A stretch of DNA of 64,000 nt from Mizuhopecten yessoensis. Its lineage: Eukaryota. Below the pieces are notes generated by a model that saw only the letters and a list, made by a program, of their open reading frames with translations, was not told the origin of the DNA and did not search any database. The stretch lies in contig NW_018405641.1 in NCBI RefSeq assembly GCF_002113885.1, positions 363,434 through 427,433 of the forward strand. Reading direction: 5' to 3'. Of the stretch, positions 29,707-59,399 are shown in pieces; the first letter of the stretch is position 1, and the number at the start of each line of letters is the position of its first letter. The position numbers and the translations under genes are program-made.

Positions 29707-32616
29707 AAAGCTGCCATTTTGACTCCAGTGTGTAGGTCTGTGAAGTCATTTTCTTGGTCCTATGCGTGACGTCACAATTGAGACAATTGAAACTCACAAC
29801 CAATCACAGGGCTGATAGGTCATACATGGGTTAATACGCAAAGAAATATGGCATGGTATATTCACTAGATAACACAGTACAATATGTGATAAACTTACTT
29901 ATACTTAAATAAATAGAGTTCTGTGTTACCGGAGCAACGACCGGGAGGACACGTGACACATGTTGATGTAGGAAAACAATCAGCGAATCCAGCAGAAAAG
30001 AAAGACAATCCTCAAAAACAGCTGCACGACGGGAACGGAAAAACAAAGGAAGTAAAACAAGATGATAGTGAGCCAACACCAACTGAATTGGACCAGGCCA
30101 AAAGAGGAGAGCATCGGAGAGATCCAGACAGATTCAGAGTGATAATACCTGACGGATACCAGCTAGTTAAATCCGAAGATTACGAACACATGCAGTACGA
30201 TCTTGTGAATCAAAGAGAAAGCATTGAAGAGCTTACAAGCAGGTAAGTACACTGTGTTACTTTGATGACTAGAATATTTATATTGAATTACACTGTTTAA
30301 ATAAAGAATATTTATTTTCTTGATAATGTGATTCAATGAAGTTAGGCTGGTGGTCAAGTGAATTGAAAGTTAGATTTTGAGATAATCATGTTTAGTGGAA
30401 AGTGATCCAAGCACATGATTTGTATAGCATATACATTTCAGTACATGATATTAATGTAATGAGCAACAACTGTTAATTTTCAATTCCAAAATAAATGAAT
30501 ATTTTGAAAGTTGTTTGTCATATCGCTTTTAATATCTCAAACTAAAACAAAACAAAAAGCAGCATATCATTCATTCCTGAAATATTTGTCTCATCTACTT
30601 GTTTAGGTTAAGTGCCATCGCTAGTAGCAAGCTAAAGGAGGGTAACCCTAACATTGCTGACCTGAGTGACAAGAACCGGCCGACCAAGCTCGGGGAACAC
30701 TTTGCCGCCATGTACGATGACCAATGGTCAGAGGCCTTCGAGGAGATGGGTAAGGGTAAAAAAAAAGCTGCAAGCGAGGAGGAGGACGAGGAAGAAGAGA
30801 TGAAACAAATTGATAAGTTGTTGGATGTTGTCAAGGTAGGTGTGATTTCATCTTAGTATAACTCTTAAAGTATGAATAAACACCATATTATTAATTATAA
30901 ACCAGAATGATTTTATTTAGATAAGTACGACAACTTTTCCCCAAATACCGAATAAAGCTTTGTTTGTTTTAGGAGTCGTATCGGTTTTGTGGAACAGAGG
31001 CTGACAAACAGCTACAAAAAATTGCCATGGGTATGAAAGATGCAGTTTCTCTACAACAAACGGCAGAACAAGTTGCTGCAATAGACTCCAAACTGGAACA
31101 ATCAACTGAATTAAAACAGAAACAAGACACTAAAAAAATGTCAGGAGTAGATATTAAATCTGGAACTGAAAGTACAGATACAGCAAGTGGTCAATCTAAA
31201 CCAAAGATTGGATCAGACGGCGGTCAGCCTGGACAAAAACCTGGAGCAGCTGGTGGTCAGTCTGAACAAAAACCTGGATCAGTCGGCGGTCGGCCTGGAC
31301 AAAAACCTGGAGCATCTGGTTGTCAGTCTGAACAAAAATCTGGAGCAGCTGGTGGTCAGTCTGAACAAAAATCTGGAGTAGCCGCTGGTCTATCTGGGGG
31401 AAAAAGTTCTACATTAGCAGGATCACTAAATACAGCAAAGCCTGCTACCCCGCCTGTTGGAGAAAAGGTACGATTATATGTACAATATGTATCCGTTCCA
31501 AACAAATTATGTATAAACCGTATGAAATGATATAATTGCTGAAATTGTTTATGTATAACTTGGTTAAATGCGCTTTATATCTCATTCAGACGGGCTCTGA
31601 TAATGAAGTTTTATTGCAGAAGGGAGAAACGGCAGAAGCTAGGGGGAAGTCTCCTATGTCAGAGACTTGGCAAATAGCCTTGAGGTGCGCACGCAGCTTC
31701 CGGAAAGAAACAGCCTTGACCGCCGTTACAGAGATCAAACAAGTAAAGTATATTCACGTATAGCTGAAGTATTTCTTGTGCATTGTACTACGATTCACGA
31801 TTGTCTTACTTATGGTAGAGTCCTATCATTCTATGTCGTTTCTTCAGCAAAGACATATTTAATTTTTTCGTCATTTTCGTAGCGTCGAGTAGCTTGCCTA
31901 TTTACTATAGCAAAGACTAACATATAAAATATCTGAACCTCCACGGAAGTTCGATCCCTGCGACCATTCATTATACAGCGGGGAACAATTCAAACTGTTG
32001 TCATTTCTTTAAAAAGCTCAGCAACCTACAATTGCCTTTGAATGATATCAGAGGAAATAGCTTAGAGTTAACAGGGAAAAGCTGCCCAGAGGCAACACAT
32101 TTGAAACGTAGTTAGATTATCTACCTGATGAATGTCAGGAATAGTAGTATTCCTTTAAACGCTAGGTTACGAGTTACTAAATACCACTATACATTTTACA
32201 ATTTCTTTGAAAGTTCAGAATCAGCAAATTATTTATATTAATTTATCATACAAAAAGGCTGATGAGGACAAAATATTTTGCTGCTTCAGCTTTTCAAAGA
32301 CCAATACATCAAAAAAATGAAGTTGGACACATCAGCGACACTGCCGGACGCTATGATGAAATACATTGACCGCTGTGTGGAGCTGATGTGGCTTATGGCT
32401 GTACAGGACCCTCCCATGGAGATCAAATGGGCTGACCATGGTGAAAGAAGTGATACTAATTACTTCAAGTTCTACCAGTCAAAGGGTAAAATGGTGAGGC
32501 AATGTGTGTGGCCGGCCGTGTTTTTGAGTGCTCATGGTGGTATTGTCAGCAAGGGCTATATCATGGGAATGACCCCTCCTCCACCAGAACAAGCGCAGAA
32601 AAAGAAAGCAAAGTAG
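27691..32616 (+). CDS. MIEAP/SPATA18 (mitochondria-eating protein) C-terminal-domain protein, ~774 aa, 8 coding exons
   Basis: Exons 27691-28284, 28575-28592, 28658-28840, 29917-30242, 30607-30835, 30973-31467, 31590-31742 and 32290-32616 join through GT/AG introns into a 2325-nt open frame. Family motifs RLS...NPNIADLSDKNRPTKLGEHF..MYDDQWSEAF and YIDRCVELMWLMAVQDPPM...VWPAVFL...GIVSKG. A family member, not necessarily the SPATA18 ortholog. Confidence 0.88.
29563..29893. mobile_element. Old MITE-like intronic element shared with copy 1 (~3190-3370)
   Basis: Inverted motifs TTTATCACATA (~29630) and TATGTGATAAA (~29883); block GTGACGTCACAATTGAGACAATTGAAAC..CCAAT.ACAGGGCT is present in both paralogs. 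Confidence 0.35.
31186..31416 (+). repeat. Coding 33-bp minisatellite (11-aa GGQ[P/S][G/E]QK[P/S]Gxx), ~7 units
   Basis: Read directly inside exon 30973-31467. Confidence 0.9.
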
Positions 32617-39900: not shown

Positions 39901-42286
39901 ATTTCCAAAATTGCTGTACGTCTTCATATGTTTCGATTTTTTTTAGACATAGATAAACATATTATTTTACTGTTAGTACTGATGATTTGTCCTAAATGGG
40001 CGAAAATAATCGAGCGTAGTACTGTTTACTTGACCTGTTGCATCGGCTCACTAGACATTTTAAAATAGGCGATTCCTTTCTCTGTACTCTTGTGATTATT
40101 TTAGGTAAAAAGGTGGTTAACTCCTTGGTGGTGGTGGTGACGGGGGTGGGGAGGTTTCATACAAACCCTCGAGGTTGGCCGCGCCCTTGTAACTGGAGAT
40201 AGTGGATGTCATATATCATCTGTTGTTACTAAGAATACCGAACGTTATAAAGATTTTCTGGGCACCTTTCCCTTATTACTGTATCCCTCCATCAGCTTCA
40301 GACCAATGTAGACATGGATTAACACCGATAATTTCTAAATGGTCAAAATGGTGCAGAGCAAATTTTTGTTTACCTCGCTTGTCTCTTTGTAACGACTCAC
40401 TTAGATTGTTTCCTTTTTAAATAGGTGCTTCCTTTTCTGTATCTCTAGTCATGTCTTTGTCACCTTCTTTACGACAAATAAGTGTGATAAATGCAAAAAT
40501 GGCCATATGGAGCTGTAAATCGTTAACTTGACTTATTATTATCATTTTTTATTATTTGAAGCAAATGCTGCAAATATAACCAATACATAGGTTGGTCAGA
40601 GAACTGATAATATTTAGAGGATATCATAAGAATCGACATTTTTCTGTTTGAATCTGTACATATGTTTTTGTTTTATTCTTTCAGAAAACATATGAAATTA
40701 CAAAGCAGCTTTCAAAAGAGTCTGCAAAGAGCATGGTAGAGGCAATTATGGCAAGTTTACATAATATTGGAGTTCCACAAAGTACACAGGTAAATATATA
40801 CAGTATGTCAACATTATACATCATCAGTATCAATTTTGGTAGGGCTTTACAGGTATGGATATTTAGAATATAATCAACAATTATGTGTTTTCCCTCTGAA
40901 GATTCCTATTTTTCCATATTGGAATAAGCAATATTTCAAAGGCTAATTTGAATATAAAATTAATATTTAGTTCTGATCAAATTTCACCAAATTCTGATAG
41001 TTATTCACGGTGAAAAAATATGTAATTCTTCAATAATATTCATCAGTTTAGAAATATGTAATATCAAAGTTTTACTTTATACACACACAATGTACGTATT
41101 TAAGGTGTCGCAACGTTTCAAGGCCGACTGGTCGGTCTCTTTGACACGCTATGACTGAGTGAGCGATCTTCAGTCATATATACTATAAAAAATTACCTCC
41201 TCGTTACAATCCTTATCTCCTTCTGTTATCGTCTTATATCTACTATTTTAATGTGTTTTCGATTTGTGTTGACGCTATGCTATACTTACATATAACTACA
41301 TGTTACTATAACAGTATACACACGATAACAGAGCTTGGTATATTTTAGCTTAGTGGACATGCGGCCGACAGTGCGGGGACTCTGTTGGCTCATGTCCATG
41401 CGATCAGAAGGGAGAACGTGGAAATGTCCATACCCCAAATCAAACAGGTAAATTCACCAACGGTACAGACATTAAACTTATTGAACGTTTCTAATTATCT
41501 CTTTCTTCCTGGACACATTTGGGACAATACTTAAAGCATATATTACAAGACAAAAAAATATTATCAGAAATTTATATTTACAGCCAACAGCTTAGTCTTG
41601 ACAAACGTGAACAGTGTACATAATTACAATATCAATCATAAAAATCATACATAAGTTCATCTGAAATTCAATTTATTCTCGGTTTTACGAAAATATTTGT
41701 TTAACGAGGATCTTGCTTTTTTAATCAAACAACTGGAATTACTTGGAAAAATGTTTCCCCTGGCTTTTGCCCTTGAACATGTCTTTTTAACGTCTCCATT
41801 TTCACTTACTGTCTATTGTCTTCTATTCAACCTTCAATGGTATGACGTCATATCGATTGTCTTAAATATGACGTCATAATGGGTGTAATTACATGACGAA
41901 ATACAAAAAAACACGTTAGTTCTGTGATGAAAAACTTTATAAGAACTTTATTTCAATATCGACCTTTCAGAAAGTTACATATTTCGATTATTTCGTATAC
42001 ATTTTTTCAGGAATGCTGCAAGGAGATGAAGACCCTAGACAAAAGGTCACAGCCATGCGTCTATCAGTATGCGACACAGTGTGCCCGCCTCACGTGGCTG
42101 ATGAACATTCAGGATCCTCCTCTTGTCCTAAAGTGGGCGAAAGAGGGGGAGCCCTTCCAGTCCCAGTACTTCAGCGAATATACATCGAGGGGCACTACAG
42201 TGGACTTCACCGCGTGGCCAGCCCTTTTAATCCAGGAAAATGGTGCAATACTAGCAAAAGGGATTGCTCAACCAAAGAGGAAATAA
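36925..42286 (+). CDS. Divergent MIEAP/SPATA18-domain paralog, ~398 aa, 7 coding exons
   Basis: Exons 36925-37086, 37756-37878, 38984-39213, 39564-39765, 40685-40789, 41349-41447 and 42011-42286 give a 1197-nt open frame. Motifs RLSSVVGAKLTAGNTSLADLSDPNRPTSIAEQHRELYNDVW and YATQCARLTWLMNIQDPPL...AWPALLIQENGAILAKG. The first two exons are less certain. Confidence 0.85.
41029..41167 (-). mobile_element. Second copy of the Penelope-like terminal fragment
   Basis: Homologous to 10347-10481. Confidence 0.4.
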
Positions 42287-42966: not shown

Positions 42967-44420
42967 TTATTCTCGGTGGTAAGTGATGAGGTATTCCGGG
43001 TAGCATTGCTCTGCAGCATATACGACGAACTCTCGGAAGAGCCAGTTCCCATCCCCCACGACAGAGTCGAAGTGTCCGTGACCGCAGGTGCATTTGTCCT
43101 TAAGGCACGTGGTACTTCGACAGGGTGGTCGGCGGTACTTCGTAGGGTTTGGGTCCTTACACACGAACATGTTGCCCAGCAACATGCGTACGAGCAGCAT
43201 TGTCTTTGAGCCGGGCGATCTTTGCTGTTTATGATCTGCAACAGGTGATATAAAGGTGTAACAGGGATTTAGAGATTAACGAGTTATTCTTGCCTTGAAA
43301 AGCATTATATCATATTATAGTTAGCTTTAAAATTAAGACTGTTCAGTATCATAATTTGATGTACAAATCTGTTCAGTTAAGACACTCAATGTCATAAGAT
43401 CCGAAAAACATGTGAAAACGAAGATATATGTCGTCTTTTATAAAACATAGAAGACAAGACTAAAACTTAGTACACAACCTACGATATCATATATTTTTGA
43501 TATTCTTATAAGCATGTATCAACCTTACTTGTAAGGAAACTTGGTAGGTCAATGTTAGGTCCCATGTGTGTTCGTCTTAACTTAGTAAACCTATTCAAAC
43601 CTATCGCGATTGCTGTCTCTCTCGATAACACGGGTTAAATAAGTCGCACATGGTTCGATTAAGATATGTCAGACTAAGGTAAAAGAGGTATCGTCCTTAC
43701 CAGCGTATTGGTCCGCCTTTGTTGATGTTTCAGCACCATATATCCCCATTCCAAACATGGCCTTCTCATCGCTCATCCTACAATCTAATCCCTGTTGAAT
43801 TACGGTCTGTACGATTTCCGGCTTTGTTCCATGGAACAGGTAGTGTTCGTTGATCTCCGGAAATATATCATCATAAAGTATGGCCCCATTTGTAGGTGAC
43901 GTATCGATTGCCCCTTTGGTTTGCACACGGATGTTTTCGAGTGATCTTAGAGCTGTTGCCCCCTCTTCCGCCAACATTCTGAACTGCTCCTGACGTTTTG
44001 TTGCATATCTATTGTACACGTCAATATTCTCAATGCGCTCAACCTTGTCTACTTTTATCCGTTTGTGTCTGAGATTGACCGCGTCCCGTCCCTGTCCAAC
44101 CAGCTTATTGTCCCACGTGGTTTGTACCAGACTCTCGATCGCCTTCTTGGTGGAGGCGTCTACGGGAACTACTGACCATCGCTTTACTGCCCTGCTGTTC
44201 TTTGACAGGACCGTCAGGGGAGTGTTTGCTTTGAACTTGGTCCAATACGGAGGACTGATTGGACTGTCGTGTGCCAGTTTGAACCAGCTTGATGGAGAAC
44301 ACCGCAGAGGCTTTCTAATCTTAGATGAATCTCCACTTGATAGCATACTTGTCAGATGCTTTGCGGTTTTTGACACCTGTGTTTTCTCTCCCTTTAGTAC
44401 AACATGTTTTCCAGATTGGT
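42967..44420 (-). other. PARP catalytic domain (last two exons), H-Y-E triad
   Basis: LFHGT (H), GIYGA (Y) and REFVVY (E) across the intron 43236-43700. Confidence 0.92.
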
Positions 44421-47400
44421 CTGAAATTTTAAAAAATACAGGTAAACGACATCAATTATTTTGTCGAGTTAGTTTAAACCATACCATGAAAGTCTCATTA
44501 GATTTCTTTCATATACGTTATGAGCACATGTTATTGGACTTTAAGATACACTTTATTGAAGTTTACTGTTCTTTCTTTTTTTACTAAACACTACACATAA
44601 GTTGAAAATTTGCTTTGTACCATTCAAACCCATACACAACTTACCAAACTCCATCTTCATGGGGGTCTTTGTATGTTCCTCAGCTATATTATACAGTTTT
44701 GTTTTGGTCCGTATAGATATGCTAGTGGGTATTTTCACATTATTGGTACTCAGGAATTCAGCTTTCATAGCGCCAGTAAGCTCTTTTTTAAGTCTGTTCA
44801 CCTTCCGACTGCCGCATGCCGACAGCTCTATCGAACACCCAACCGTCTCTTTTGAGGCACGTGACTGACTAGTAGCTGTTTTAGTTTTGTGCGTTCCCTT
44901 ATCTATTTCAAAAAACAAGACATATTGGAATAGAGTGTAACGTTAGTTGTATTATAATAGATGGTTATAAAAGAGAGTAGAATTTACAAGTTAGATAAAC
45001 ATCATCTAAGGATCCCCGTACCACTGCCAAAACGGTAACTTTTTTGGGGCATAATTTAGCTTTGATAAATAATAATGTGTCCTGTTTCAACTTTGCTTGT
45101 TATATCCAAACGGAAGTTAATGGGAGGTTAGTCTAAACAGGAAAAATCACAATGCAGTGGGACATTGATCTTTAAAACTGTATTACCGTTATCGAGGTGT
45201 AGGACACTATAACAAATATTAGTGGGACATGGATCTTTAAAACTGTATAACCGTTATCGAGGTGTAGAACACTATAGCAAATATCAGTGGGACATGGATC
45301 TTTAATGCTGTATTACCGTTATCGAGAGGTGTAGAACACTATAGCAAATATCAGTGGGACGTGGATCTTTAATGCTGTATTACCGTTATCGAGGTGTATA
45401 TCACTATAACAAATATCAGTGGGACAGGGATCTTTAATGCTGTATTACCGTTATCGAGAGGTGTAGAACACTATAACAAATATCAGTGGGACAGGGATCT
45501 TTAATGCTGTATTACCGTTATCGAGGTGTAGAACATTATAACAAATATCAGTGGGACGGGGATTTTTAATACTGTATTACCGTTATCGAAGTGTAGAACA
45601 CTATAACTAATATCAGTGGGACAGGGATCTTTAATGCTGTATTACCGTTATCGAAGTGTAGAACACTATAACTAATATCGGTGGGACAGGGATCTTTAAT
45701 GCTGTATTACTGTTATCGAGGTGTAGAACACTATAACAAATATCAGTGGGACAGGGATCTTTAAGGCTGTATTACCGTTATCTAAGTGTAGAACACTATA
45801 ACTAATATCAGTGGGACAGGGATCTTTAATGCTGTATTACTGTTATCGAGGTGTAGAACACTATAACAAATATCAGTGGGACAGGGATCTTTAAAACTGT
45901 ATTACCGTTATCGAGGTGTAGAACACTATAACAAATATCAGAACTGTCGAAATATTATCCATTTAGACGTAGAACGAGTATCAGCACTTCACTTTAGTGG
46001 ACTATATCATAATAGATAAAACGATAGTATCTTACGCAATTCTTTGGCTAACTCGTCATAGGTCTTGTCATCGAACGCCACGATCGTCACTTCCTGTAAA
46101 TTCATGAAATTCCTTAAAAGCTTACATCATCTTTTCTTGTATCCTCCGAACTTTTACAGATATTGAATACTTATAGTAGGAAGCTGGTAGAATTATAACT
46201 CTACTTTTTTACGCTGAAGATATTAGCAATAATTACGAGAACGAGAATATTTCCCTTACTGCAACATCAAATAGCTGATAAAATACATGTACATTATATT
46301 CTATCAAGGAATAACAGCCACAAGGAAGAAACCTGCTAAAAAGGGGCGTTAAACACACTAAATAAATACACAAACAACACCCCTTTTAACCAGAAACTTT
46401 TCTCGCATTAAGACACATAAAAAGTTACATCCGACTTAACGATCGGCTAAAGAGATCGAAAACATTAAATAAGAACTTCACATAGCGAAGTTCGATGGTG
46501 ATAGTCGGAGAGGTCAGTGTTCACTGTATTGTCATGTCAAATTTCAGAAACAATCACTTTATTGCAATGTAAAATTTCAGAAACAATCACTGTATTGCAA
46601 TGTAAAATTTCAGAAACAATCACTGTATTGTAATGTCAAATTTCAGAAATAATCACTGTATTGTAATGTCAAATTTCAAAAATAATCACTGTATTGCAAT
46701 GTCAAATTTCAGAAACAATCACTGTATTGTAATGTAAAATTTCAGAAACAATCATTGTATTGTAATGTCAAATTTCAGAAACAATCACTGTATTGTAATG
46801 TCAAATTTCAGAAACAGTCACTGTATTGTAATGTAAAATTTCAGAAACAATCACTATATTGCAATGTAAAATTTCAGAAACAATCACTGTATTGCAATGT
46901 CAAATTTCAGAAACAATCACTGTATTGTAATGTCAAATTTCAGAAATAATCACTGTATTGTAATGCAAATTTCAGAAATAATCACTGTATTGTAATGTCA
47001 AATTTCAGAAACAATCACTGTATTGCAATGTCAAATTTAAGAAACAATCACTGTATTGTAATGTCAAATTTCAGAAATAATCACTGTATTGTAATGTCAA
47101 ATTTCAGAAACAATCACTGTATTGCAATGTCAAATTTCAGAAACAATCACTGTATTGTAATGTCAAATTTCAGAAATAATCACTTTATTGCAATGTCAAA
47201 TTTCAGAAACAATCACTGTATTGTAATGTAAAATTTCAGAAGCAATCACTGTATTGTTATGTCAAGTTTCAGAAATAATCACTGTATTGTAATGCCAAAT
47301 ATCAGAAACAATCACTGTATTGTAATGTCGAATTTCAGAAATAATCACTGTATTGTAATGTCAAATTTCAGAAATAATCACTGTATTGTAATGTCAAATT

Positions 47401-50400
47401 TCAGAAATAATCACTGTATTGTAATGTCAAATTTCAGAAACAATCACTGTATTGTAATGTCAAATTTCAGAAACAATCACTGTATTGTAATGTCAAATTT
47501 CAGAAACAATCACTGTATTGTAATGTCAAATTTCAGAAACAATCACTGTATTGTAATGTCAAATTTCAGAAACAATCACTATATTGCAATGTAAAATTTC
47601 AGAAAAAATCACTGTATTGTAATGTCAAATTTCAGAAACAATCACTGTATTGTAATGTCAAATTTCAGAAACAATCACTGTATTGTAATGTCAAATTTCA
47701 GAAACAATCACTGTATTGTAATGTCAAATTTCAGAAACAATCACTGTATTGTAATGTCAAATTTCAGAAACAATCACTGTATTGTAATGCCAAATTTAAG
47801 AAACAATCACTGTATTCTAATGTCAAATTTCAGAAGTAATCACTGTATTGTAATGCCAAATTTCAGAAACAATCACTGTATTGTAATGTCGAATTTCAGA
47901 AATAATCACTGTATTGTAATGTCAAATTTCAGAAACAATCACTGTATTGTAATGTCAAATTTCAGAAATAATCACTGTATTTTAATTTTAAAATTCAGAA
48001 ACAATCACTGTATTTCAATGACCATTATCAGAACTTCTCGTTGTATTACAATGTCTAATTTCAGAAATTATCATTGTATTACAATGTCTAATTTCAAAAG
48101 TTATCATTGTATTACAATGCCCAATTTAAGAAACAATCACTATATTACAATGTTCAATTTCAAAACTCATATTTAAACAGTGTATAACAATGTCCAATTT
48201 CGGAACTTATCTTTGTTTTACAATGTCCTATTACAGAACAAATCAATGTATAAATGTGTCCGATTTCAGAACTGCAACAAACTTACAAACAAAGAAACTC
48301 AAATGTCTATCAGATTGGTGTGACCTAAACTCACCTTTGTATTGATGGTTCTGTAAAATATATGTCAATGTAGTGACCAAGACCAACAAACAAAATATAT
48401 CAAACTATCGGCCAGGGATCATGCATTTGAATTGTCATTTTTATTGGAACAGTCTGAGCAAAAGATTGAAAGTTTTAACTCTTGGTTGTAACATTGTATA
48501 TTGCCCAGTTTTCGGCACGGGGTTGTCAAATATATGATATTATGACATAATGTTTATAACTCCGGAAGTCCCCCTGAACATACACGGAAATTATTGAAAG
48601 TTCATCGCGTGGGTTGGACTAAAATCAACCAACGAATACAGTAACTTGACCTTTACCTCTGGTTAATATGAATCAGTGTACTAGTCATGGTAATACTGAT
48701 CAACCAAAACATATCATCAACGTAAAAAATAAAGTGTTGATCGGTACAGTATGATGGGGTTGGAAACCTAAATGCTATCCCAATAGCATTCATATGAACA
48801 TAAGGTCCATACAATATTTCCGTACATAAATTATATCAAAGTGATATCTAATTTTGTACGCATACGCTTGAAATGCGTTCCCAAATACATTCATAATATA
48901 TTCGCTACCATTCCGTAGTATTTGGGTTAGTGTTTTGGAATTCAAAACAAATTTGAGAATATCTGTTGGAAAACTTAGTTGTTCACCATCAGACACGTGT
49001 CGACACATACCTTAAGGGGTTTTTTCGAGCTTTTTAAGACCTTGACCGTGGTGTCCATGGTTATGGCGATAGCCGAGTGGAGGGGATACTGAAGCATTTT
49101 ACCACAACCCATCACTGGTAGGACAATCGTTCCAAAACCAAGGTCAGCTGCCTTTTTGAATACTGATTCCAAGATGATAGTAAATTTCTGAAAATATATA
49201 TTAAATACTTTGAATAAAAACAGAATCTTTGGTGAAATATTCTACAAAATCATCTGAAAGATGTAGTAAGATAGAGCATTGGTTAGCGCACTCGCCTTTT
49301 ACTACTTTTACCACTGTTTTATTCCCAGATGATAAACATTTTGGGGTCACTTGCTCGACCAAGTGGGCTTCCTCCAACATATCCCCTACACGCTACCCAC
49401 TGGACTAACAAGAGTGATAAATACAAGTTGATAAGCTTCTGTAACCGGGCTAATACGAAGTCTTTAAAGAGTGCGGTGAATCGGATTCCCCACCATGAGA
49501 TGTGTATACAAACTTCGAGCACATGACCTGTTTTGTCAGTGATTGTCACCAAACTTTTGTGAAATCCCACCCTCGGCTTGCGACGTGGTTTGATTTATTT
49601 TTTTCAATAAGATTTTTGGGATGAGATAGGGGAATCTCAACCAGGAGACGATTCTTAAGTTGTCAAGCACAAGGCTTGCCAAGTCTTTGGCAACTTCATA
49701 ATCTTTCCCCGAGGGTTGAGATACCATAGTCTCGTCTCCAGTGGGTGAAAGATTATTGTTATTTTACCATGTTCATACTATCATTAACGCAATACAACGT
49801 TGACTTTTCAAGCTCAATGCATTTTGATGTGGCGTTTATGCATTGTTGACGTGACGTTGTACAATTGTTTTAATAGGGAAATCCCCGTCTCAGGCACCTG
49901 TCCAGATTAAGAGAAAGCATAATCTCGCTTAGGTACAGGTTATTGATTTTGTTAGACAATCCAATATCGATAGGCAGATATACAGAGAGCAATGTCGGCT
50001 AGTTAGTTAACTTCTCATTCAATGCAGCCAAAACAAAATTACAGAATAGGGACGGCCAATAAACAATTTTACTAATTTTGTTTTGTTTTTGTGTTGAAAA
50101 GGTGAAAGCGTCCTAACAAATTGTCCATTCGAAGAAAAGGCTTGTTCAGCACGTTCAGCGAATGCTTACATTATGAACAAAACCAGCAGTAAAAGACAAA
50201 CCACTGCATTTCCGTGAACTCTATTGCAGAATAAATCGTGCAAGATCATTCCAAACTAGAAATCAAAGTCCTATGAGTTGTATTACCTTCCCGAATGTCT
50301 ATTGAAACAAATTCTTGCAGTTTCTTTTAGCTACGTCATTCACAAACAAGTCATTATTTTAAGTCAAAGATTCCATTGTCTCCTGAGAATGAAATCTAAT

Positions 50401-53400
50401 ACTAAAACAATACCTAAAAATAGACTGAAATGGACCATGAGGAATAACTCGGGGAATCACATCTACAGTTCAATCTAAGAACTTTGAGAAAATTGTGTCT
50501 CCGCTGATGGAGGTCCATCTCCATGTATGTAGTCTCCATGACTACCGCAAACGACCGATCCCAAAGGGACATTTGACTAAGGCGCTTCTATAATGACACG
50601 GCTGCCTGAAGTGGAGAGCGGTGCTTGGACTTGCCCACTTGATTTTACGTTATTGACCGTTGCCTAGGTTCAAACGTCCGATGCATTATGCAAAATAGTG
50701 AAAGGCGACAGCGTTTACCCATAATTCGCAATTAAGGTTAACGCACAGACAAGCAGTTCAACTAATAACAATGACAGAAAAATTCGGAATCAATTTATAA
50801 GCATGCAAACAAATTTCAATATTACACATGGGCCTTTCCGTAACCTAGCCAAACGGAATACATAACTGAGAAGCCATAACCTGATCGGACAGAAGACAAG
50901 ACTAAAGCGCTATACCTGGTCAGAAGACGAGTTCTGTCGCTGTGGCAGTACCATGGTGATGAGGTGTTTACATGACAACTTTCCCCCGTCACATCCAATA
51001 GTCCCGTTACCATCATACACTAGCATGGCGGTCTGGTATGCCTGTAAAACACAAATACCGCTCAACTGTCCGTAAATTAAAAATAACTTGAGTGGACATC
51101 AAGTGTTATCTATCTATATATGTAAATGCAATGATGCGTCTTTGACAAATATGTTATCTCACAAAATATTGAAACATCAATTTGGTAACGAATTAGGTGA
51201 ATGGGTCGGGATCCCTTAACATTACCTGTGTGAGTTCGTCGCCACCTCTCTTGGCGTATGCCTTGGATATCAAACCTGTCTGTAGCTCCAGGCTGTCTCC
51301 TACAACGTTCACCAAAACGTCCGCCTGACAACATACAGTGTGCATAACTGTACAAGTGGTAGATCATATGTGTATATGTTAAAAGTAGGATACAGATGAG
51401 ATATCTAAAACATATGGTTCACAAGACAAATTCTATATTTCGCATTTTATAAAAAAATAAATATGAAATACACTCATTTCGGGATAATTTTGAACTGAAA
51501 CAAGAGCTAAGATGAAGTCAATTACTCAATTCTCAACACCTAAACCATTTATATAGCAATGCGTCTCGGGGTTAAACTGGGTTTTTTCTGTGTTTTATAA
51601 TATACCATCAAACAATTTAATATTCAGAAGAAAAAAAACCAAGGATACATTATGTACACCTTTGAGGTATTGTCAAAAATGTACTTGTATGCTCACATCC
51701 ATTTAGACACAATATATTCTGAAACAGAAGTTACAATGAATTACCTGAAAAAAAATTGGTATCAAAAATGAACAAAGGAAAAAATTCTGTGAACAGTGGA
51801 ATATGAAACTTGAAATCAATCTCCCCGATATTTGTAAGTTAAAACGTTTACTGGACGGAAGTGCACATTTTGCTCCAGACAGACTTTGATATCGAAACAA
51901 CGGGCCATAATTCTATATAAATTTGGATATGAGATCCTACCTAAGTCATCAACACTCAGACCTCCCAGGATAAACAGGTATAGCAATGATGAACTAAGGT
52001 GAAATAAATGTGGAGTTGTGCCCCCCAACAAACTTTTGTATCAAATTTTGAAAAAAAAGGAGCATAACTCTATCTAAAGTTGGACGTACGTAGACACATC
52101 GACATTCTGACTTAACAACATATATAAGTTAGTTAATGTAGGTGAAACGATTCAGCTATACTTTGTTCCTGCATTCACCTCTGTGTGTTTTACGTTCATC
52201 ATTATCCGCGGAGAAGACCCCGGATGTAAACGTTATGATTGGGGCGAATCAAAACAGAAAATCTTGAAAATTTACTGTGTAGTGGTTAACCCGAACAAAT
52301 GGTTATGTTTTTATATCAAGTATTTGCCTAATAATGAAGCCTATGAGAATCTAAACACCTGGTATGATACCAACCTACCTTTTCAAGAGAAACGTCCCCT
52401 TTCTTGACGGTCAGTTTGGTGCCACTTATGTTAATGGTGTCTGACCGATCGACTGGGCGTGCACGTGAATGTCTAATAGGGCGATCCTGATCTATGCAAA
52501 TGGTAGTAATGTTTCCAAGCCCAGGTTCCAAGGAAAATAATGGAAACATCATCCCCAGCGTATGGGAGACGTCGCGCGTAGGTTTTCTGTCTGTGCTGCT
52601 AAAATTACACAATATTATACAATACATATACGTGTATGCTCAGTTGTAAAGGTGATGTTGTTTATTTAACAAACAAAATGCATCATGCATTTGTGTGTGG
52701 TTACTTAATGTATATAGAAAAAGATAAATAAGTCATTTCATATACAAAGAAAACTACCTAATTTTTCATACACAGATAGCTAACTCATTTTATATACATA
52801 CATAACTAGCTTATTTTATATACACAGATAACTAACTAATTTTTTATACACTGATAACTAACTCATTTTATATACATACATAACTAGCTTATTTTATATA
52901 CACAGATAACTAACTAATTTTTTATACACTGATAACTTACTCATTTTATATACACAGATAACTAACTCATTTTATATACACTGATAACTTACTCATTTTA
53001 TATACACAAGTATTTCTATGAATGTCACTATCAATAATACCAGGATAATTGGAAACATACCTGACCTTTAACCTATCGTGTAAAGTGTGAACACCTACCC
53101 GGAAGTGGTATCCGACGTGGCGTGGGTTCGTATTGGTTTAATAGCTTTCTTTTTAAACTTGACGTCGATTTCACAGTCATTATCTTTTCGAAATTTGTCC
53201 AAAAATTGTTTACCAATAGAAGATTCCAGACACACTGATACCATCTTCTTCTCTTCGTCTAAAATGGGAATAAAATATCTTACTTCATATAAACATCATG
53301 TCACATCAATATCTACCCTGACTACAGCTTGTATTAGTTATAATAGAATAAATCGTTTACTTCCTTGGGGGAGAAATCAACACATCTCGACTCTTGGGTG

Positions 53401-56400
53401 AGACACTTCAATTGTCAAACATTTAGAAACATGTTGACAATTTTCTTAATCTGTCCCCTAAAGTCTGGCTGAATAATTGAACCGCCGGATTGGTGGTGGC
53501 TAGACTGTGGTACATGCAGCTTATTAGTGGCTAGACTGTTGAAAACACGGAATGTTGGTAGCTGAACTATTGAACACACAGCTTCACTGTGGCTGGACTA
53601 TGGAACACAAGGGGTATTTGCTGCTGGACTATGGAACACACAGCTTCACTGTAACTGGACTATATGTAACACACTGGACTATGGAACACGAGGTGTATTT
53701 GCTGCTGGACTATGAAACACGAGGTGTATTTGCTGCTGGACTATGGAACACGAGGTGTATTTGCTAATGGACTATGGAACACGAGGTGTATTTGCTGCTG
53801 GACTATGGAACACAAGGCTTCTTGGTGGCTGGACTATGGAACACGAGGTGTATTTGCTGCTGGACTATGAAACACGAGGTGTATTTGCTGCTGGACTATG
53901 GAACACAAGGCTCCTTGGTGGCTGGACTATGGAACACGAGGTGTATTTGCTGCTGGGCTATGAAACACGAGGTGTATTTGCTGCTGGACTATGGAACACG
54001 AGGTGTATTTGCTGCTGGACTATGGAACACAAGGCTCATTGGTGGCTGGACTGTGGAACACACAGCTTCACTGTAACTGGACTATATGTAACACACTGGA
54101 CTATGGAACACGAGGTGTATTTGCTGCTGGACTATGGAACTCGAGGTGTATTTGCTGCTGGACTATGGAGCACGAGGTGTATTTGCTGCTGGACTATGAA
54201 ACACGAGGTGTATTTGCTGCTGGACTTTAGAGCACGAGGCTCATTGGTGGCTGGACTGTGGGACACGAGGTGTATTTGCTGCTGGACTACGGAACACGAG
54301 GTGTATTTGCTGCTGGACCATGGAACACGAGGTGTATTTGCTGCTGAACTTTAGAACACGAGGCTCATTGGTGGCTGGACTGTGGGACACGAGGTGTATT
54401 TGCTGCTGGACTAAGGAACACGAGGTGTATTTGCTGCTGGACCATGGAACACGAGGTGTATTTGCTGCTGGACTATGGAACACGAGGTGTATTTGCTGCT
54501 GGACTTTAGAACACGAGGCTCATTGGTGGCTGGACTGTGGAACACGAGGTGTATTTGCTGCTGGACTATTGAACACGAGGTGTATTTGCTGCTGGACTAT
54601 GGAACACGAGGTGTATTTGCTGCTGTACTGTGGAACACACATCTTCACTGTAGCTGGACTATGTAGCACACTTGACTATGGGACACGAGGTATACTTGTG
54701 ATTGAACTGCCTATGGAACACACTGCTAATTGGTGGCTGGACAGTAGAACACACAACGTCTTGGTGGCTGGACTTTGGACAACACAGCTCATTGGTGGCT
54801 GAACTGAAAAACCAATGGCACATCTGTGGCATGACTATGGACCACGTGGCGTATTTGTGGTTGGACTATGGAACACATGGCTTAATGGTGGCTTGACTGT
54901 GGAACACATAACTTAATGTTGGCTTGACTGTGGAACAAACAGCTTAACCGTGGCAGAAATGTGGGACACGCGGCACATTTTTGGCTGGATTGTGGAACAT
55001 GAATAAACGGTGGCGGAACTGTCGAATACACGGCTTTATGGTGGCTAAAATGTGGAACATACGGCTGATTGGTGGCTAGACTGTGGAACAAACAGCTTAT
55101 TGATGGAAGAGCTGTTGACCACACGGCATATTTGTGGCTGGACTGTGGAACACATAGCTTATTGTTGGCTAAACTGTGGAACACACAGATCATTGGTGGT
55201 TTGGCTATAGAAAACGAGGCGTATTTGTGGCGCTTGACTATCGAACACAAGGCTTATTGGTTGCTGGACTGTGTTCTGCTAATTAATGGTGGCTTGACTG
55301 TGGATCACAGAGATTAATTGCTGTTGGACTGTGAAACACACGGCTTTTTGATGTCTTGAGTATTGAACATACGGCATATCTGTATGACTGTGAAGCACAC
55401 GGAATGGTGGATGTACTGTGGAACATACAGATCATTGATGGTTGGACTGTGGAACACACGGATTTTTGGTGACTTGACTGAGGGACACACCGATTATTTT
55501 AGGCAGTGTTGTGGGACAAACCGAATGATTTTGTCTGGGAAAATTTAAAAGGGGGTAATTTGGGCACTGGATAGTGAAACAAATCTGGCCGATTAATGGA
55601 ACAACCGGATTAGTTGAACAAACGGATTGTTGGTGACTAAACTGTTGGAAAGAACGGTTGATTGAAGAGTAGGGAAAAACGGATAAGTAGTAGCTTGATA
55701 GTTTGATATTTAGTGCGAAGTTACCGACGATATGTTGGAAATATGGTGACGAAATTGACACGGTATATAACATGGATCCGTTAGTCTTGGATGGGTTGAT
55801 TTTCCTCGGCATCTTTATTGGTCCATTCGTGCTGAAGGTCATTGTTAAGATAGGTCGGGTAGCACTCATACTGTCTTGTTAGGGCCTTCTGACTTCCTCT
55901 GGTTATCCCCTACCTTCCTGTTGTCACATCCGATGTTGACTTACAGGTGTTGTCTCTTTGTTTAACATTGATGAACTGGCAGAAAACGTTCCCTCCTTAG
56001 CTGTCGTCTGCGGCTGACTAGTGTAAAGCATATTGGAAATGAAATAGTACTTGCTGGGTTTCCCTTCAATAAGCTTCTTCACCTCAGCCCTGGCGGTCTT
56101 GACGATATTCCAGTCTTTCTTTGTCTGTGTTTTCCTTGCTTCAGATTTTTTCCCGTTGTTTCACATTGATCAGTCTTCGGTTTCTTTAGTGATCAATGGT
56201 ATATTCCATTTACTGATGATATTTTTAATCGTTACGTGTATTTTCTATCACTGGGCCGCGGTGGCCGAGTGATTGAGACGTCTGACCGTCTACGACCACT
56301 AGCCCTCCACTACTGGGTCGAAGGTTAGAGGCCTACGTGCGGAATACGCCAAGTACTGTCCGCAGGTCGCTGACTTTTCTCTGGTCCCACAGGCTTTCCT

Positions 56401-59399
56401 CCACCACCAAACCTGGCATTTCCTTAAATGACTAGAGCTATAGATAAGACTCAAAACACAAACGACCCAAATTCCCTTTTAGTGTAGACGAAAATACAAC
56501 CCGAATATTGTAAATACATGTACACTTCTGACCTTCAAATCTGTCACCAATTGATATTATAATCCAAGAGTGGTTTGTTTTATAAGTTTCTTCATTTGGA
56601 CATATTTTTGAATAAAGTAAGTTAGCATTTACTCAAATAATTCAAATATCAGAAAAGTGGAATATCAGTGTCTCAAATCAAATGTCGATAACGCCACGGT
56701 TGGATGGCTTTATCATCGGATATAAAAAATAAAAAATAAATTACAACAAAACTTTTCCAAATAATTGACTCATCCTATGTTTTCCATTCTGAGGAGCATT
56801 TTAACTTACCGTCGTCACAGATTGATGATGTTTTGATTTTAGTTGTTTCCTTCTCGCCTTCAGTTGGATCGTCATCCTCCGCCACGTCGGGATACCTTCT
56901 GGAATCTGTCGAGTTTACTCCGTCTTCTTCGAAGTCACCTTTCCAGGCTCCGTCATCAAAGCCCGGATGGGGAATACGCGGGGAATAATGCCGATCATCT
57001 CGTCGTCCGTCCCCTGGGACATCATAACGTTCAGGTCGCCGTCTGTCTCCCGGGGAGTGATAGCGATAATCTCGTTTTCCGTCCCCCGGGGGAAGATAAT
57101 AATCACCTCGTCCTCCGTCCCCCGGGAAATGATAGTTATCATCGTGGCCGCCACGTCTGACCTCCGGGGAACGGCAGCGTTCAAAATCACATCGTCCGTC
57201 ATCATCTTCCGGGGAATATGAACGATCTCTTTGGCTGTGCCGATGTGACCATTGGGTAGGTTCCGTATCAGGATATGGAGTACCCGGATACATGGTAGTT
57301 TCACGTGATGGTTGTACTGGATTTCGGGGGTCACTGGTACCCAGTAATTCCGTGAGCGTATCATGGAAACAGGGGAAGTATGGTTGAAAGTATACAGACT
57401 GACCGGAGATCGTATGTGTCCGGGAAAACACCTGACGTAACACTGAAACAAATAGAAACATTGCTGTGAAATACAGAATCGTTGTTTACACAACTGAGGT
57501 ATACGCCTAAGGTCTTCATGTATGGTTCATGTATACAATTGTGGCAGATTTTAATTGTACATAGGATAAAGGTCGCCTTCGAGCTTAGAGCTAGAGGGAA
57601 TTTCCCTTTAGCTCAGTGGTAGAGCGTCCGACTATTAACCTGGAGATCGAGGGTTCGATCCCCGGTGGAAGCACACTATTCTCTTGCCTGTTACAAATGG
57701 AGGATTGGTCGAGTGGTTAATACTCCGACCTTCTAAGCAGGCGGCCGGGGTTCGATCCCAAAGGTCGCGGTACGCATGGAATATTAGAGAAAGTGTTTTT
57801 CTTCTGCCCACACAACTCCAACAACCCGGGTGGGGTATAAAATGGTCTGGGTGGGTGTTACGGTATATGTGCTGTAGCATTCAAGTGAGGTGGCACTATA
57901 ATTGATACCATTGGAAGCACGGTTCAACTACAAAAAGAACACAATACATCTCCACAGCCATACACTCATAGGGAGATATAAGCCAGGTGGCGTAGGACTA
58001 GTAGTTAGCGCCTGATAAGGCAGCTCCTGCGAATTCCTCAATATTGTATTGATTAATATATATGCTAATTGTATTGACTGTATCAAATTGTATATCTATG
58101 TACTGTAAAGCGCATTAGGGTAGCTTATGTTAGCTAGATAGGGCGCTATGTCAAATGTTGTATATCATTATTTATTAAATGGTGTCCGTGGCCCTCCCTG
58201 TATTGACAGGGAGTTAGATCCTGGGTTGTGGTTTTCTAGGGCGAACATATTTAAAAAGGGGGGAGTAGTGTGGCAGATTTTAATTGTACATAGAATTAAG
58301 GTCGCCTTCTAGCTTCGAGCTAGAGGGGAATTTCCCTTTAGCTTAGTGGTAGAGCGTCCGACTAGGAACCTGGAATTCGAGGGTTCGCTCCCCAGTGGAA
58401 GCACATGTACACCATGCTCTTTTCTGAAGTAGTACATTTTTTTTCACCTTTTGATTACATTGTAACCTGAACCAAACATGTATGTATACATAAATAAGTG
58501 TGCTGAATGTGACTTCATTAATATCGAATGACAAATGTTCGGAAGACTTTATCATCAAATGCTTGTTTTGTGTTTAATACGTAGGTCTCCAGCCACTCTC
58601 AAAATAACCTTCTTTAGGAATTGCAAAGATATCACCAATTGAAACAAGGCAAGATTTATGAAAAGACAGACAGACAGCCATACCAGGACATTCAATTATA
58701 GGTATATTATATATATGTAATTTTTTTTTAGATTTGCATTAAATCTCCTAAGTGTGAACCTACAAGATAGTGTATCACAACAAGGATATGGTGGATCTAT
58801 GACGGTTATGTAGATAATTGTTTCGGTATAAAGCCCCTATAGTATTTTAAATAGCATTGTACGCAACCAACATGTTGCATTCAATTAGATCCTGAATAAT
58901 TTTTAGCTTGTCTTAATCAAATGGGTCTTCTGATACCTTTCTCCGTGTTCCTCACTCTCACTATCAGCAGAACGCCCTCTTGGTAGGGCGCTTCCTGATA
59001 CTCTTCCGGTCCGATCCCAGACTTCCGGTTCTTAATGTAGGCGTTCAGTTGTTTCGAGTCAAAATCGTACCTATTGATTACAACTAACCCAAGGGGGCGG
59101 GGTTCGATCTCAAATACGAACACGTCCGGTGCTCTTTCCATCAACTCCTCTTGGCATTGTTGGATATCTGAAACATTAGAATGGTACATGTTCTAAAGGT
59201 CTCCAAACAGTTAACTGCTGCTGCTGTAGTAGCATGACCTTTGTAACATTTTTGTCCCACCTTACATAGTATCATATGCAGAAATTTTATAATATATATA
59301 TGAAAATAAAACATAAATGTGAAACTCACCCTGGTTTTGTTTATACGAACCTAACTCGGAAAGGGCTCGGACAGCACACTGTGGTGGCTTTATGTGAAC
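42967..59399 (-). CDS. PARP14/PARP10-like multidomain ADP-ribosyltransferase (RRM-like, low-complexity region, macrodomain, KH-like, PARP catalytic), >=~1000 aa, 5' end not defined
   Basis: Phase-compatible exons 59330-59399 (tentative), 58937-59167, 56810-57442, 53099-53258, 52379-52598, 51226-51324, 50916-51041, 49011-49187, 46036-46093, 44645-44902, 43701-44420 and 42967-43235 total 3021 nt. PARP motifs VERIEN, NEHYLFHGT, MFGMGIYGA..STKADQY and FREFVVY...QCYPEYLITY. Confidence 0.88.
45155..45941. repeat. 65-bp tandem repeat, ~12 copies (intronic)
   Basis: Unit ATCAGTGGGACAGGGATCTTTAATGCTGTATTACCGTTATCGAGGTGTAGAACACTATAACAAAT. Confidence 0.95.
46036..52440 (-). other. Single macrodomain split over five exons
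   Basis: LTVKKGDVSLEK|ADVLVNVVGDSLELQTGLISKAYAKRGGDELTQ|...GGKLSCKHLITMV...|...TIVLPVMGCGKMLQYP...PLK|EVTIVAFDDKTYDEL. Confidence 0.85.
46521..48270. repeat. 33-bp satellite (TCACTGTATTGTAATGTCAAATTTCAGAAACAA), ~50 copies, decaying at the right end (intronic)
   Basis: Unit read directly; 11-aa periodic ORFs. Confidence 0.95.
52735..53010. repeat. AT-rich ~26-bp tandem repeat (AACTCATTTTATATACACAGATAACT)
   Basis: About 10 imperfect copies. Confidence 0.8.
53485..55650. repeat. 31-bp satellite (GGACTATGGAACACGAGGTGTATTTGCTGCT), homogeneous core 53680-54630 with diverged flanks
   Basis: Unit read directly; 31-aa periodic ORFs. Confidence 0.93.
55650..56150 (-). mobile_element. Degraded LINE ORF2 fragment (region upstream of RT)
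   Basis: KKDWNIVKTARAEVKKLIEGKPSKYY and RKINPSKTNG resemble the W..YK.ARN.V...I..AK..Y and L..L...KA.GPD motifs of CR1/L2-group ORF2; broken by stops and frameshifts. Confidence 0.4.
56253..56462 (+). mobile_element. tRNA-derived SINE with a V/Meta-type central domain
   Basis: GGGCCGCGGTGGCCGAGTG A-box head, degenerate B-box, TTTTCTCTGG...GCTTTCCTCCACCA core and an A/C-rich tail. Confidence 0.7.
57540..58405 (+). mobile_element. Miniature non-autonomous LTR retroelement (TRIM) with a tRNA-like Pol III promoter inside each LTR
   Basis: LTR1 57540-57695 (TGTGGCAG...TGTTACA); LTR2 58269-~58405 (3'-truncated); PBS-like AA-TGGTGTCCGTGG at 58180; PPT AAAAAGGGGGGAGTAG abutting LTR2; A-box TAGCTCAGTGG at 57609 and B-box GGTTCGATCC at 57652. 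Confidence 0.85.
57701..58176 (+). mobile_element. tRNA-derived SINE with an L2-like tail, inserted into the TRIM primer-binding site
   Basis: A-box TGGTCGAGTGG, B-box GGTTCGATCCC, 3' stem-loop TGTAAAGCGC...GCGCTAT plus a TATT-rich tail; TSD AAATGG at 57695-57700 and 58177-58182. Confidence 0.75.

What the first reader, a model, noticed from the sequence alone, without database searches (positions are those of the whole stretch)
42967..44420. Macro-PARP architecture with an H-Y-E, tankyrase-like catalytic domain
Seen: LFHGT, MFGMGIYGAETSTKADQY and FREFVVY. Known: vertebrate macro-PARPs PARP14/15 have H-Y-L and are mono-ADP-ribosyltransferases; the Glu is typical of PARP1/2 and tankyrases (GMFGAGIYFAENSSKSNQY), though not sufficient for polymer synthesis. 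I see no WWE domain before the catalytic domain. Inference: a lineage-specific chimera with an ADP-ribose reader plus a potentially poly-ADP-ribosylating writer, likely mis-annotated as plain PARP14.
Basis: partly seen in the sequence, partly recalled or inferred. Interest (0 to 1): 0.7.

Follow-up and report, generated by a model that had tools for sequence, protein, structure and literature searches.

The report
Scallop macro-PARP keeping the catalytic glutamate
The stretch holds the last two coding exons of a real scallop gene for a PARP14-like protein (RNA-binding modules, one macro domain, ADP-ribosyltransferase domain). Its enzyme domain, unlike vertebrate PARP14/15, keeps the full His-Tyr-Glu triad, and the gene belongs to a large, apparently undescribed family found across molluscs, brachiopods and annelids.

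Summary
Window 42967-44420 (minus strand) is the last two coding exons of Mizuhopecten yessoensis LOC110449500. Its 1058-aa RefSeq product (P0009) matches the window exactly in 11 exons. It carries a Macro domain (residues 506-606) and a PARP domain (850-1055) with triad H926/Y957/E1038.

The Glu aligns with the tankyrase catalytic Glu. It is invariant in all 79 relatives that have a complete catalytic domain.

No WWE domain is found in any of 36 full-length relatives. The module in front of the catalytic domain is KH-like, on weak evidence.

Tankyrase is the best solved match (profile 94 bits; Z 22.2, rmsd 1.8 A). PARP12 (84.5 bits) and PARP15 (Z 21.3) are close behind. A catalytic-domain tree cannot say whether the family sits with tankyrase or with the Glu-less clade 3.

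The non-catalytic parts are PARP14-specific: RRM_PARP14 and KH_PARP14 domains, and a macro domain closest to PARP14's macro domains. Retention of an ancestral Glu in a PARP14-like lineage is therefore more economical than a chimera.

The family is not scallop-specific. It spans bivalves, gastropods, Lingula, Owenia and Helobdella, with at least 5 copies in this genome. It also carries a conserved Cys3-His/Cys cluster.

Whether it makes mono- or poly-ADP-ribose is untested. The scan noted a different H-Y-E PARP elsewhere in this genome.

The parts
42967..43235 (-). Terminal coding exon (residues 970-1058 plus stop). It holds the beta-strand MLLVRMLLG, the Cys/His cluster, FDSVVG, the catalytic Glu in FREFVVY, and the YPEYLITY tail.
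   Evidence: exact match to P0009. Pfam PARP. Aligned to the tankyrase C-terminus.
43030..43032 (-). Codon GAG for E1038, the third residue of the H-Y-E triad.
   Evidence: sequence. E in 79 of 79 complete relatives; invariant R-E-F; aligned with the tankyrase catalytic Glu (AEYVIY).
43072..43122 (-). Putative zinc knuckle C1008-x4-C1013-x4-C1018-x-C-x-H-x-H, in the loop between RRPP and FDSV.
   Evidence: three Cys plus a following His or Cys in 77 of 79 aligned relatives. The loop is modelled at pLDDT 94-96. Metal binding is inferred, not shown.
43701..44420 (-). Penultimate coding exon (residues 730-969). It holds the end of the KH-like module, the PPYW start of the catalytic domain, H926 (43833-43831), the donor loop, Y957 (43740-43738) and the STKADQY motif.
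   Evidence: The same exon border (ADQY.|G) is seen in 8 genomic fragments of relatives.
44646..44900 (-). Exon for residues 645-729: a linker and most of the KH-like module that precedes the catalytic domain.
   Evidence: AF2 model of residues 655-770 has pLDDT 83. The best Foldseek rows are KH type I domains, weakly (E 7e-3).
46037..52594 (-). Five exons (52594-52379, 51324-51226, 51044-50916, 49190-49011, 46093-46037) that encode residues 419-643, including the single macro domain.
   Evidence: mapping. Pfam Macro at residues 506-606, 26.3 bits; best solved relatives are PARP14 macro domains (57.8 bits).
53098..59168 (-). Upstream exons (59168-58938, 57443-56811, 53259-53098) for residues 77-418: an RRM-like N-terminal part, a long Asp/Arg/Gly/Pro-rich low-complexity linker, and a small domain before the macro domain.
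   Evidence: RRM_PARP14_3 is found in 21 of 36 relatives but scores below threshold in P0009 itself.

Best explanation
The stretch is the 3' end of scallop gene LOC110449500 on the minus strand. The gene has at least 12 exons, spans more than 16 kb and runs off the window's right edge.

The 1058-aa product is built like PARP14.

It belongs to a much-duplicated family found across Lophotrochozoa. The ART domain of this family never lost the ancestral His-Tyr-Glu triad. It also keeps a donor loop of the same length as tankyrase's (MFGxGIY) and the S-x-K-x-x-x-Y motif. It has gained a Cys3-His/Cys cluster, probably a zinc knuckle, next to the acceptor side.

Most likely mechanism (inferred):
- H926 and Y957 hold NAD+.
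- E1038 does the Glu-dependent transfer chemistry, as in PARP1 and tankyrase. Vertebrate PARP14/15 instead use substrate-assisted catalysis.
- The macro domain binds ADP-ribose on the enzyme's own or neighbouring products.
- The RRM and KH modules direct the enzyme to RNA or RNP targets, plausibly in stress or antiviral responses.

Shown here: the gene structure, the domains, the triad placement, its conservation and the phyletic spread. The product length (mono versus oligo/poly) is open.
For: Gene model: the exons reproduce P0009 exactly.

Domains: Macro plus PARP in P0009. Among 36 relatives, PARP 36, Macro 32, RRM_PARP14_3 21, KH_PARP14_x several, WWE 0.

Macro domain: closest to the PARP14 macro domains in PDB entries 3vfq and 4abk.

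Triad: 77 H-Y-E and 2 Y-Y-E among 79 complete relatives. R-E-F, Y957 and K964 are invariant.

Solved structures: profile against PDB gives TNKS2 94 bits, TNKS1 89, PARP12 84.5, PARP15 71, PARP14 60, PARP1 49. The AF2 model has pLDDT 94. TNKS1 gives Z 22.2, rmsd 1.8 A over 190 residues; PARP15 gives Z 21.3, rmsd 2.8 A.

Phylogeny: the family is monophyletic (88/92) and lies outside the strongly supported (100/99) scallop Glu-less clade.

Cys cluster: present in 77 of 79.

One mRNA in relatives: intron-free contigs from three sequencing runs carry a 733-aa Macro+PARP ORF, and another carries a 1472-aa RRM+Macro+PARP ORF. Genomic fragments of related genes break at the ADQY exon border.

Distribution: molluscs, Lingula, Owenia, Helobdella.

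Copy number: at least 5 copies in this genome, one of them a tandem neighbour.
Against: There is no biochemical data. H-Y-E is not sufficient for polymer synthesis: by general knowledge, PARP3 and PARP4 are H-Y-E mono-transferases.

Continuity of its transcript therefore rests on the RefSeq model and on relatives.

The macro domain scores only just above Pfam's cut-off, and its first phosphate loop is not the GGG type, so ADP-ribose binding is not certain.

The KH assignment is weak (E 7e-3).

The catalytic-domain tree uses only 140 columns and scallop paralogues as references. It does not resolve the deep position.
Confidence: 0.75

Rival explanations
1. Domain-swap chimera. An ancestral PARP14-like gene in Lophotrochozoa replaced its Glu-less ART domain with one from the tankyrase lineage or another H-Y-E lineage.
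For: Tankyrase is the best solved match by sequence profile and by rmsd. The donor loop has the same length and the MFGxGIY motif. The AU test does not reject family plus tankyrase as one clade (p 0.495). The same genome also holds classical Glu-less PARP14-like genes.
Against: PARP12 and PARP15 score nearly as well. Tankyrase's own zinc motif between QY and the next strand is absent (gap in the alignment). The PPYW / ERIEN N-terminal part of the ART domain and the YPEYLIT tail are also shared with clade-3 PARPs. Family plus clade 3 is not rejected either (p 0.18). Protist kinase-PARP fusions share FREFVVY, which suggests an old H-Y-E type and not a recent tankyrase donation.
Confidence: 0.15
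2. It is a strict mono-ADP-ribosyltransferase despite H-Y-E, like PARP3 and PARP4. It is then functionally an ordinary PARP14-like enzyme.
For: The architecture is PARP14-like. The macro domain resembles PARP14's macro domains, which a review describes as readers of mono-ADP-ribosylated protein (PMC13224862).
Against: The Glu, the preceding Arg and the Lys of STKADQY are invariant over a family that spans phyla. The scallop's Glu-less paralogues have lost the Glu and that Lys. This argues for selection on Glu-dependent chemistry. It does not settle chain length.
Confidence: 0.45
3. Gene-model artefact. The macro exons and the PARP exons belong to two adjacent genes that the annotation pipeline fused.
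For: No RNA reads could be laid on this locus. The introns are long and full of repeats.
Against: All three RefSeq isoforms join them. Macro plus PARP occurs in 32 of 36 relatives from independent annotations. It also occurs in intron-free, cDNA-like contigs from several runs. Exon phases fit, and the reading frame runs on upstream of the PARP exon acceptor into the KH-like exon.
Confidence: 0.04

Closest known systems
Vertebrate PARP14 / PARP15 (clade 3 macro-PARPs)
   Same: The order of modules is the same: RRM, KH, macro, ART. Pfam's PARP14-specific RRM and KH families hit relatives. The macro domain is closest to PARP14's macro domains. The ART domain has the PxxW start and the YPEYLIT tail. 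The model superposes on PARP15 at Z 21.3. The family is prone to tandem duplication, as reported for PARP14-like genes (PMC4245714).
   Different: The triad is H-Y-E, not H-Y-L. There is one macro domain instead of three or two. There is no WWE domain. The Lys of the S-x-K motif is retained. There is an extra Cys3-His/Cys cluster. The ART domain falls outside the scallop's own Glu-less clade-3 group in the tree.
Tankyrase 1/2 catalytic domain (clade 4)
   Same: It is the best solved match: profile 94 and 89 bits, Z 22.2, rmsd 1.8 A, 29% identity. It shares H-Y-E, a donor loop of the same length with MFGxGIY, SxKxxQY, a short segment between the HSV/DSV strand and the Glu strand, and the E[YF]V[IV]Y..Q.YPEYLITY tail.
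   Different: No ankyrin repeats or SAM domain were found. Tankyrase's CHCC zinc motif after QY is missing, and a different Cys cluster sits in another loop. A sister relation is neither supported nor rejected.
Protist kinase-PARP and helicase-PARP fusions (unnamed; P0252-P0258, P0256, P0277-P0281)
   Same: They are 30-35% identical in the ART domain. They share FREFVVY, KSDQY, YPEYLIEY and partly RRPP(C).
   Different: The partner domains are entirely different (protein kinase, ankyrin, helicase). They have no macro domain. In the tree they group weakly with the scallop's Glu-less clade, not with the family.

Membership tests
PARP / ARTD catalytic domain (Pfam PF00644) | Profile match above the curated cut-off | tested here: met
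   68.4 bits against a cut-off of 26.7 on P0009. Each of the two exons also matches on its own.
PARP / ARTD catalytic domain (Pfam PF00644) | ART fold with His, Tyr and Glu at the NAD+ site | tested here: met
   AF2 model with pLDDT 94. Z 22.2 and rmsd 1.8 A to TNKS1. H926, Y957 and E1038 align to the tankyrase triad.
Macro-PARP (PARP14-like, clade 3B/3C) | [quoted passage not shown] | tested here: met
   Macro at residues 506-606 and PARP at 850-1055 in P0009. Found in 32 of 36 relatives. cDNA-like contigs in relatives carry both.
Macro-PARP (PARP14-like, clade 3B/3C) | PARP14-type RRM and KH modules | tested here: met
   RRM_PARP14_3 in 21 of 36 relatives, RRM_PARP14_1 in 5, KH_PARP14_8/3/2 in 4, 3 and 2. 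In P0009 itself there is only a weak KH-like fold.
Macro-PARP (PARP14-like, clade 3B/3C) | WWE domain between the macro domains and the ART domain (as in human PARP14) | tested here: not met
   No WWE hit in any of 36 members at E <= 0.01. The module in that position folds as alpha/beta and is KH-like.
Macro-PARP (PARP14-like, clade 3B/3C) | Glu of the triad replaced by an aliphatic residue. Citarelli et al. 2010 report the Glu as lost in all animal clade-3 proteins they sampled. | tested here: not met
   E1038 is present and invariant in the family. Literature statement: PMC2964712.
Macro-PARP (PARP14-like, clade 3B/3C) | Catalytic domain groups with clade 3 in a phylogeny | tested here: inconclusive
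   The family lies outside the scallop Glu-less clade (100/99). Holding them together costs only 3.3 lnL (p-AU 0.18).
Tankyrase (clade 4) | [quoted passage not shown] | tested here: not met
   No ankyrin or SAM hit in P0009 or in 36 relatives.
Tankyrase (clade 4) | Cys-His-Cys-Cys zinc motif between the SxKxxQY motif and the next strand | tested here: not met
   The profile alignment shows a gap in the family opposite the tankyrase GCPVHKDRSCYICH segment.
Tankyrase (clade 4) | Catalytic domain is sister to tankyrase | tested here: inconclusive
   Unresolved three-way split. AU p 0.495 for family plus tankyrase.
Poly(ADP-ribose)-forming PARPs (functional class) | Synthesis of ADP-ribose chains | not testable with these tools
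   This needs an enzyme assay. Sequence shows only that the Glu required for elongation in PARP1 is present.

The most novel reading that the evidence does not exclude
Lophotrochozoans keep an otherwise unrecognised, ancestral-type macro-PARP. It would be a Glu-dependent, possibly oligo- or poly-ADP-ribose-forming enzyme fused to a PARP14-type ADP-ribose reader and RNA-binding modules, with a new zinc knuckle beside the acceptor site. That would mean macro-PARPs were originally H-Y-E enzymes. The mono-transferase chemistry of vertebrate antiviral PARPs would then be a later loss.
Probability: 0.25. Interest if true: 0.75.

Novelty: new variant of a known kind. Interest (0 to 1): 0.55.

Why it matters
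Published surveys treat animal macro-PARPs (clade 3) as enzymes that have lost the catalytic Glu and therefore act as mono-transferases. Citarelli et al. 2010 found the Glu in only one clade-3 protein, from Tetrahymena. A 2026 PARP14 review does not mention H-Y-E variants. No paper in the searchable library pairs 'PARP14-like' with a retained H-Y-E.

A large, conserved family with PARP14 architecture and an intact triad gives three things:
- a natural test of what the Glu does in this scaffold;
- a handle on when and how antiviral PARPs switched chemistry;
- a correction to automatic names such as 'mono-ADP-ribosyltransferase PARP14-like', which are applied to many members.

For mollusc biology, it is a multi-copy, tandemly duplicating gene family of the kind often tied to innate immunity.

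Tried and rejected
Pfam on single macro exons gave nothing useful, because the exons are too short. The domain became visible only on the full protein.

The word-index protein search with the exon returned only single-exon genomic fragments. The exhaustive search was therefore needed.

The spliced model was never typed or sent to a search tool. The identical database protein P0009 was used by id instead.

For the tree, exons of the scallop's own tankyrase, PARP1/2/3-like and Glu-less PARP genes were joined inside a script only. The exon junctions there are approximate.

Foldseek and VIA-align cannot separate tankyrase from PARP15 (Z within 1). AU tests could not decide the deep placement.

The KH-like module has no PDB match at E <= 0.001.

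The coordinates of the model are not readable in scripts. The geometry of the Cys cluster therefore could not be measured.

Pseudogene reading rejected: open frames, canonical splice sites and invariant catalytic residues.

Full report
WHAT IS THERE. The window is eukaryotic, with about 35% G+C. It is G000:C2314:363434-427433 of a 988-Mb assembly in 82,659 contigs. On the minus strand, an exon runs from 44420 to 43701. Its acceptor is tttcag|AC and its donor is GCTG|gtaagg, phase 1. A terminal exon runs from 43235 to 42970 and is followed by TAA. The first of these exons encodes HYLFHGT and MFGMGIYGAETSTKADQYA. The terminal exon encodes MLLVRMLLG, a Cys/His-rich loop, FDSVVG, FREFVVY and YPEYLITYHRE. 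Both exons hit Pfam PARP.

GENE AND PRODUCT. An exhaustive protein search gave 1162 hits at E <= 1e-3. The top hit, P0009 (1058 aa), is 100% identical to the exon. P0009 is XP_021352075.1, 'uncharacterized protein LOC110449500 isoform X2 [Mizuhopecten yessoensis]'. UniProt names isoform X1 'Poly [ADP-ribose] polymerase'.

Residues 77-1058 map without a mismatch to 11 minus-strand exons between 59168 and 42970. Residues 1-76 are not in the window. Pfam finds Macro at residues 506-606 (26.3 bits, cut-off 22) and PARP at 850-1055 (68.4 bits). The joined exon model was not sent to any tool. The stored protein, which is identical to it, was used by id.

THE TRIAD. In P0009 the triad is H926, Y957 and E1038. 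HMM alignments put the Glu of FREFVVY on the Glu of tankyrase AEYVIY. This holds for the single exon and for a 79-sequence family profile.

An AlphaFold2 model of residues 765-1058 has pLDDT 94 and pTM 0.92. It superposes on tankyrase 1 with Z 22.2 and rmsd 1.8 A over 190 residues. It superposes on PARP15 with Z 21.3 and rmsd 2.8 A over 195 residues (Foldseek ranking).

Among 79 relatives with a complete domain, 77 are H-Y-E and 2 are Y-Y-E. R1037-E1038-F1039, Y957 and K964 are invariant.

HOW TANKYRASE-LIKE IS IT. The family profile scores against solved structures are:
- TNKS2 94 bits
- TNKS1 89 bits
- PARP12 84.5 bits
- PARP15 71 bits
- PARP14 60 bits
- PARP1 49 bits

The donor loop between the His and Tyr motifs has the same length as the scallop tankyrase's and shares MFGxGIY. 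The S-x-K motif is kept, while the scallop's Glu-less PARPs have lost that Lys. However, tankyrase's own CHCC zinc motif is absent, and no ankyrin or SAM domains are found.

I built a tree of 52 catalytic cores over 140 columns under LG+C20. It included the scallop's own tankyrase, PARP1/2/3-like genes, classical PARP14-like genes (H-Y-M type) and single-exon Glu-less PARPs. These were taken from the genome, and their exons were joined only inside the script, with approximate junctions.

The family is monophyletic (88/92). The scallop Glu-less PARPs form a 100/99 clade on a long branch. Tankyrase, the family, and the group of Glu-less clade plus protist kinase-PARPs form an unresolved three-way split. 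AU tests reject neither family plus tankyrase (p 0.495) nor family plus Glu-less clade (p 0.18). 'Tankyrase-like' is thus a fair description of the sequence. It is not evidence of tankyrase descent.

THE REST OF THE PROTEIN IS PARP14-LIKE. Domain counts among 36 full-length relatives are:
- PARP 36
- Macro 32
- RRM_PARP14_3 21
- RRM_PARP14_1 5
- KH_PARP14_8 4, KH_PARP14_3 3, KH_PARP14_2 2
- WWE 0

The macro domain's best solved relatives are PARP14 macro domains (3vfq 57.8 bits, 4abk 41 bits). Its first loop (ELQTGLISKA) resembles the non-GGG loops in the two best-scoring alignments.

The 116 residues before the ART domain fold as beta-alpha-beta-alpha-beta-beta-alpha at pLDDT 83. The best, though weak, Foldseek rows for this module are KH type I domains. 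The simplest history is a PARP14-like lineage that kept the ancestral Glu, not a chimera.

DISTRIBUTION. Named relatives come from:
- bivalves: Pecten, Argopecten, Ylistrum, Pinctada, Crassostrea/Magallana, Saccostrea, Ostrea, Mercenaria, Ruditapes, Mya, Dreissena, Mytilus, Sinanodonta, Potamilus, Solemya, Tegillarca
- gastropods: Biomphalaria, Bulinus, Physella, Lymnaea, Haliotis, Littorina, Babylonia, Nucella, Lottia, Elysia, Plakobranchus
- the brachiopod Lingula
- the annelids Owenia and Helobdella

No deuterostome, ecdysozoan or cnidarian member appeared, within the limits of these searches. The nearest outside sequences are protist kinase-, ankyrin- or helicase-PARP fusions that share FREFVVY.

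The scallop genome has at least five copies. One, LOC110449485, lies about 15-20 kb beyond the window on the same strand. Many members are automatically named 'protein mono-ADP-ribosyltransferase PARP14-like' or 'PARP15-like'.

ONE TRANSCRIPT? The indirect evidence is as follows. All three RefSeq isoforms join the macro and PARP exons. In relatives, intron-free contigs from three sequencing runs carry a 733-aa Macro+PARP ORF. Another carries a 1472-aa RRM+Macro+PARP ORF. Genomic fragments of related genes stop at the ADQY exon border, so those intron-free contigs look like spliced mRNA.

A FAMILY-SPECIFIC CLUSTER. Between RRPP and FDSV lies C-x(2,4)-C-x4-C followed by a His or Cys within a few residues. 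It is present in 77 of 79 aligned relatives and is modelled with pLDDT 94-96. I read it as a zinc knuckle in a different loop from tankyrase's zinc site. This is inference only.

LITERATURE. Citarelli et al. [quoted passage not shown] They found it retained in only one, a Tetrahymena protein (PMC2964712). Perina et al. 2014 describe frequent PARP14-like duplications in invertebrates but say nothing about their triad (PMC4245714). A 2026 PARP14 review has no mention of H-Y-E or invertebrate variants (PMC13224862). Searches pairing PARP14-like, macro or bivalve terms with the triad found no description of this family. That is absence from the held library, not proof of novelty.

VERDICT. It is a real, conserved, multi-copy, Lophotrochozoa-wide variant of the macro-PARP kind, with an intact H-Y-E triad. 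Whether it forms polymers is open.

Noticed in passing
window 32278-32616 (+) and 41924-42286 (+); also 20405-21031 / 27664-28290 (+) and 3398-3697 / 29923-30246 (+): Two terminal exons carry the MIEAP (mitochondria-eating protein, PF16026) domain (E 4e-13 and 8e-14). Upstream ORFs are duplicated, two of them 100% identical over 208 aa. This looks like a tandemly duplicated MIEAP-like gene. The last copy ends tail-to-tail about 680 bp from the PARP gene's stop codon.
   Followed up: partly
G000:C2314:441647-447053 (minus strand; about 15-20 kb beyond the window's right end): A paralogous H-Y-E macro-PARP gene (LOC110449485, P0203, 1330 aa, partial) lies in tandem with this one. It is 39% identical in the His/Tyr exon and 58% in the Glu exon.
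   Followed up: partly
own genome: C2765:76645-76752, C2765:168285-168392, C5564:1691-1798, C5569:814820-816198, C2114:75420-77520: These are classical Glu-less PARP14-like genes (WHGT, GVYFA, P[KS]M[FY]IIF..AYPEYLITF, so H-Y-M type). They coexist with the H-Y-E family in the same genome.
   Followed up: partly
P0252-P0258, P0256, P0277-P0281 (unnamed protist transcripts, including Hanusia phi): These are fusions of protein kinase, ankyrin or helicase domains with an H-Y-E PARP domain. They share FREFVVY, KSDQY and YPEYLIEY with the mollusc family. They may represent an old, undescribed PARP subtype.
   Followed up: partly
window ~45100-45900, 46750-48180, 53740-55500 (introns of the PARP gene) and 12000-13560: Long tandem repeats give periodic ORFs in several frames, for example a 33-nt unit read as NFRNNHCIVMS at 46.7-48.2 kb.
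   Followed up: no
P0182 (Pecten maximus, 1421 aa), P0189 and P0263 (Saccostrea, 1675-1683 aa): In these annotated proteins the family's catalytic domain sits in the middle of the protein (for example residues 426-716 of 1421). They are either fused tandem genes or proteins with two ART domains.
   Followed up: no
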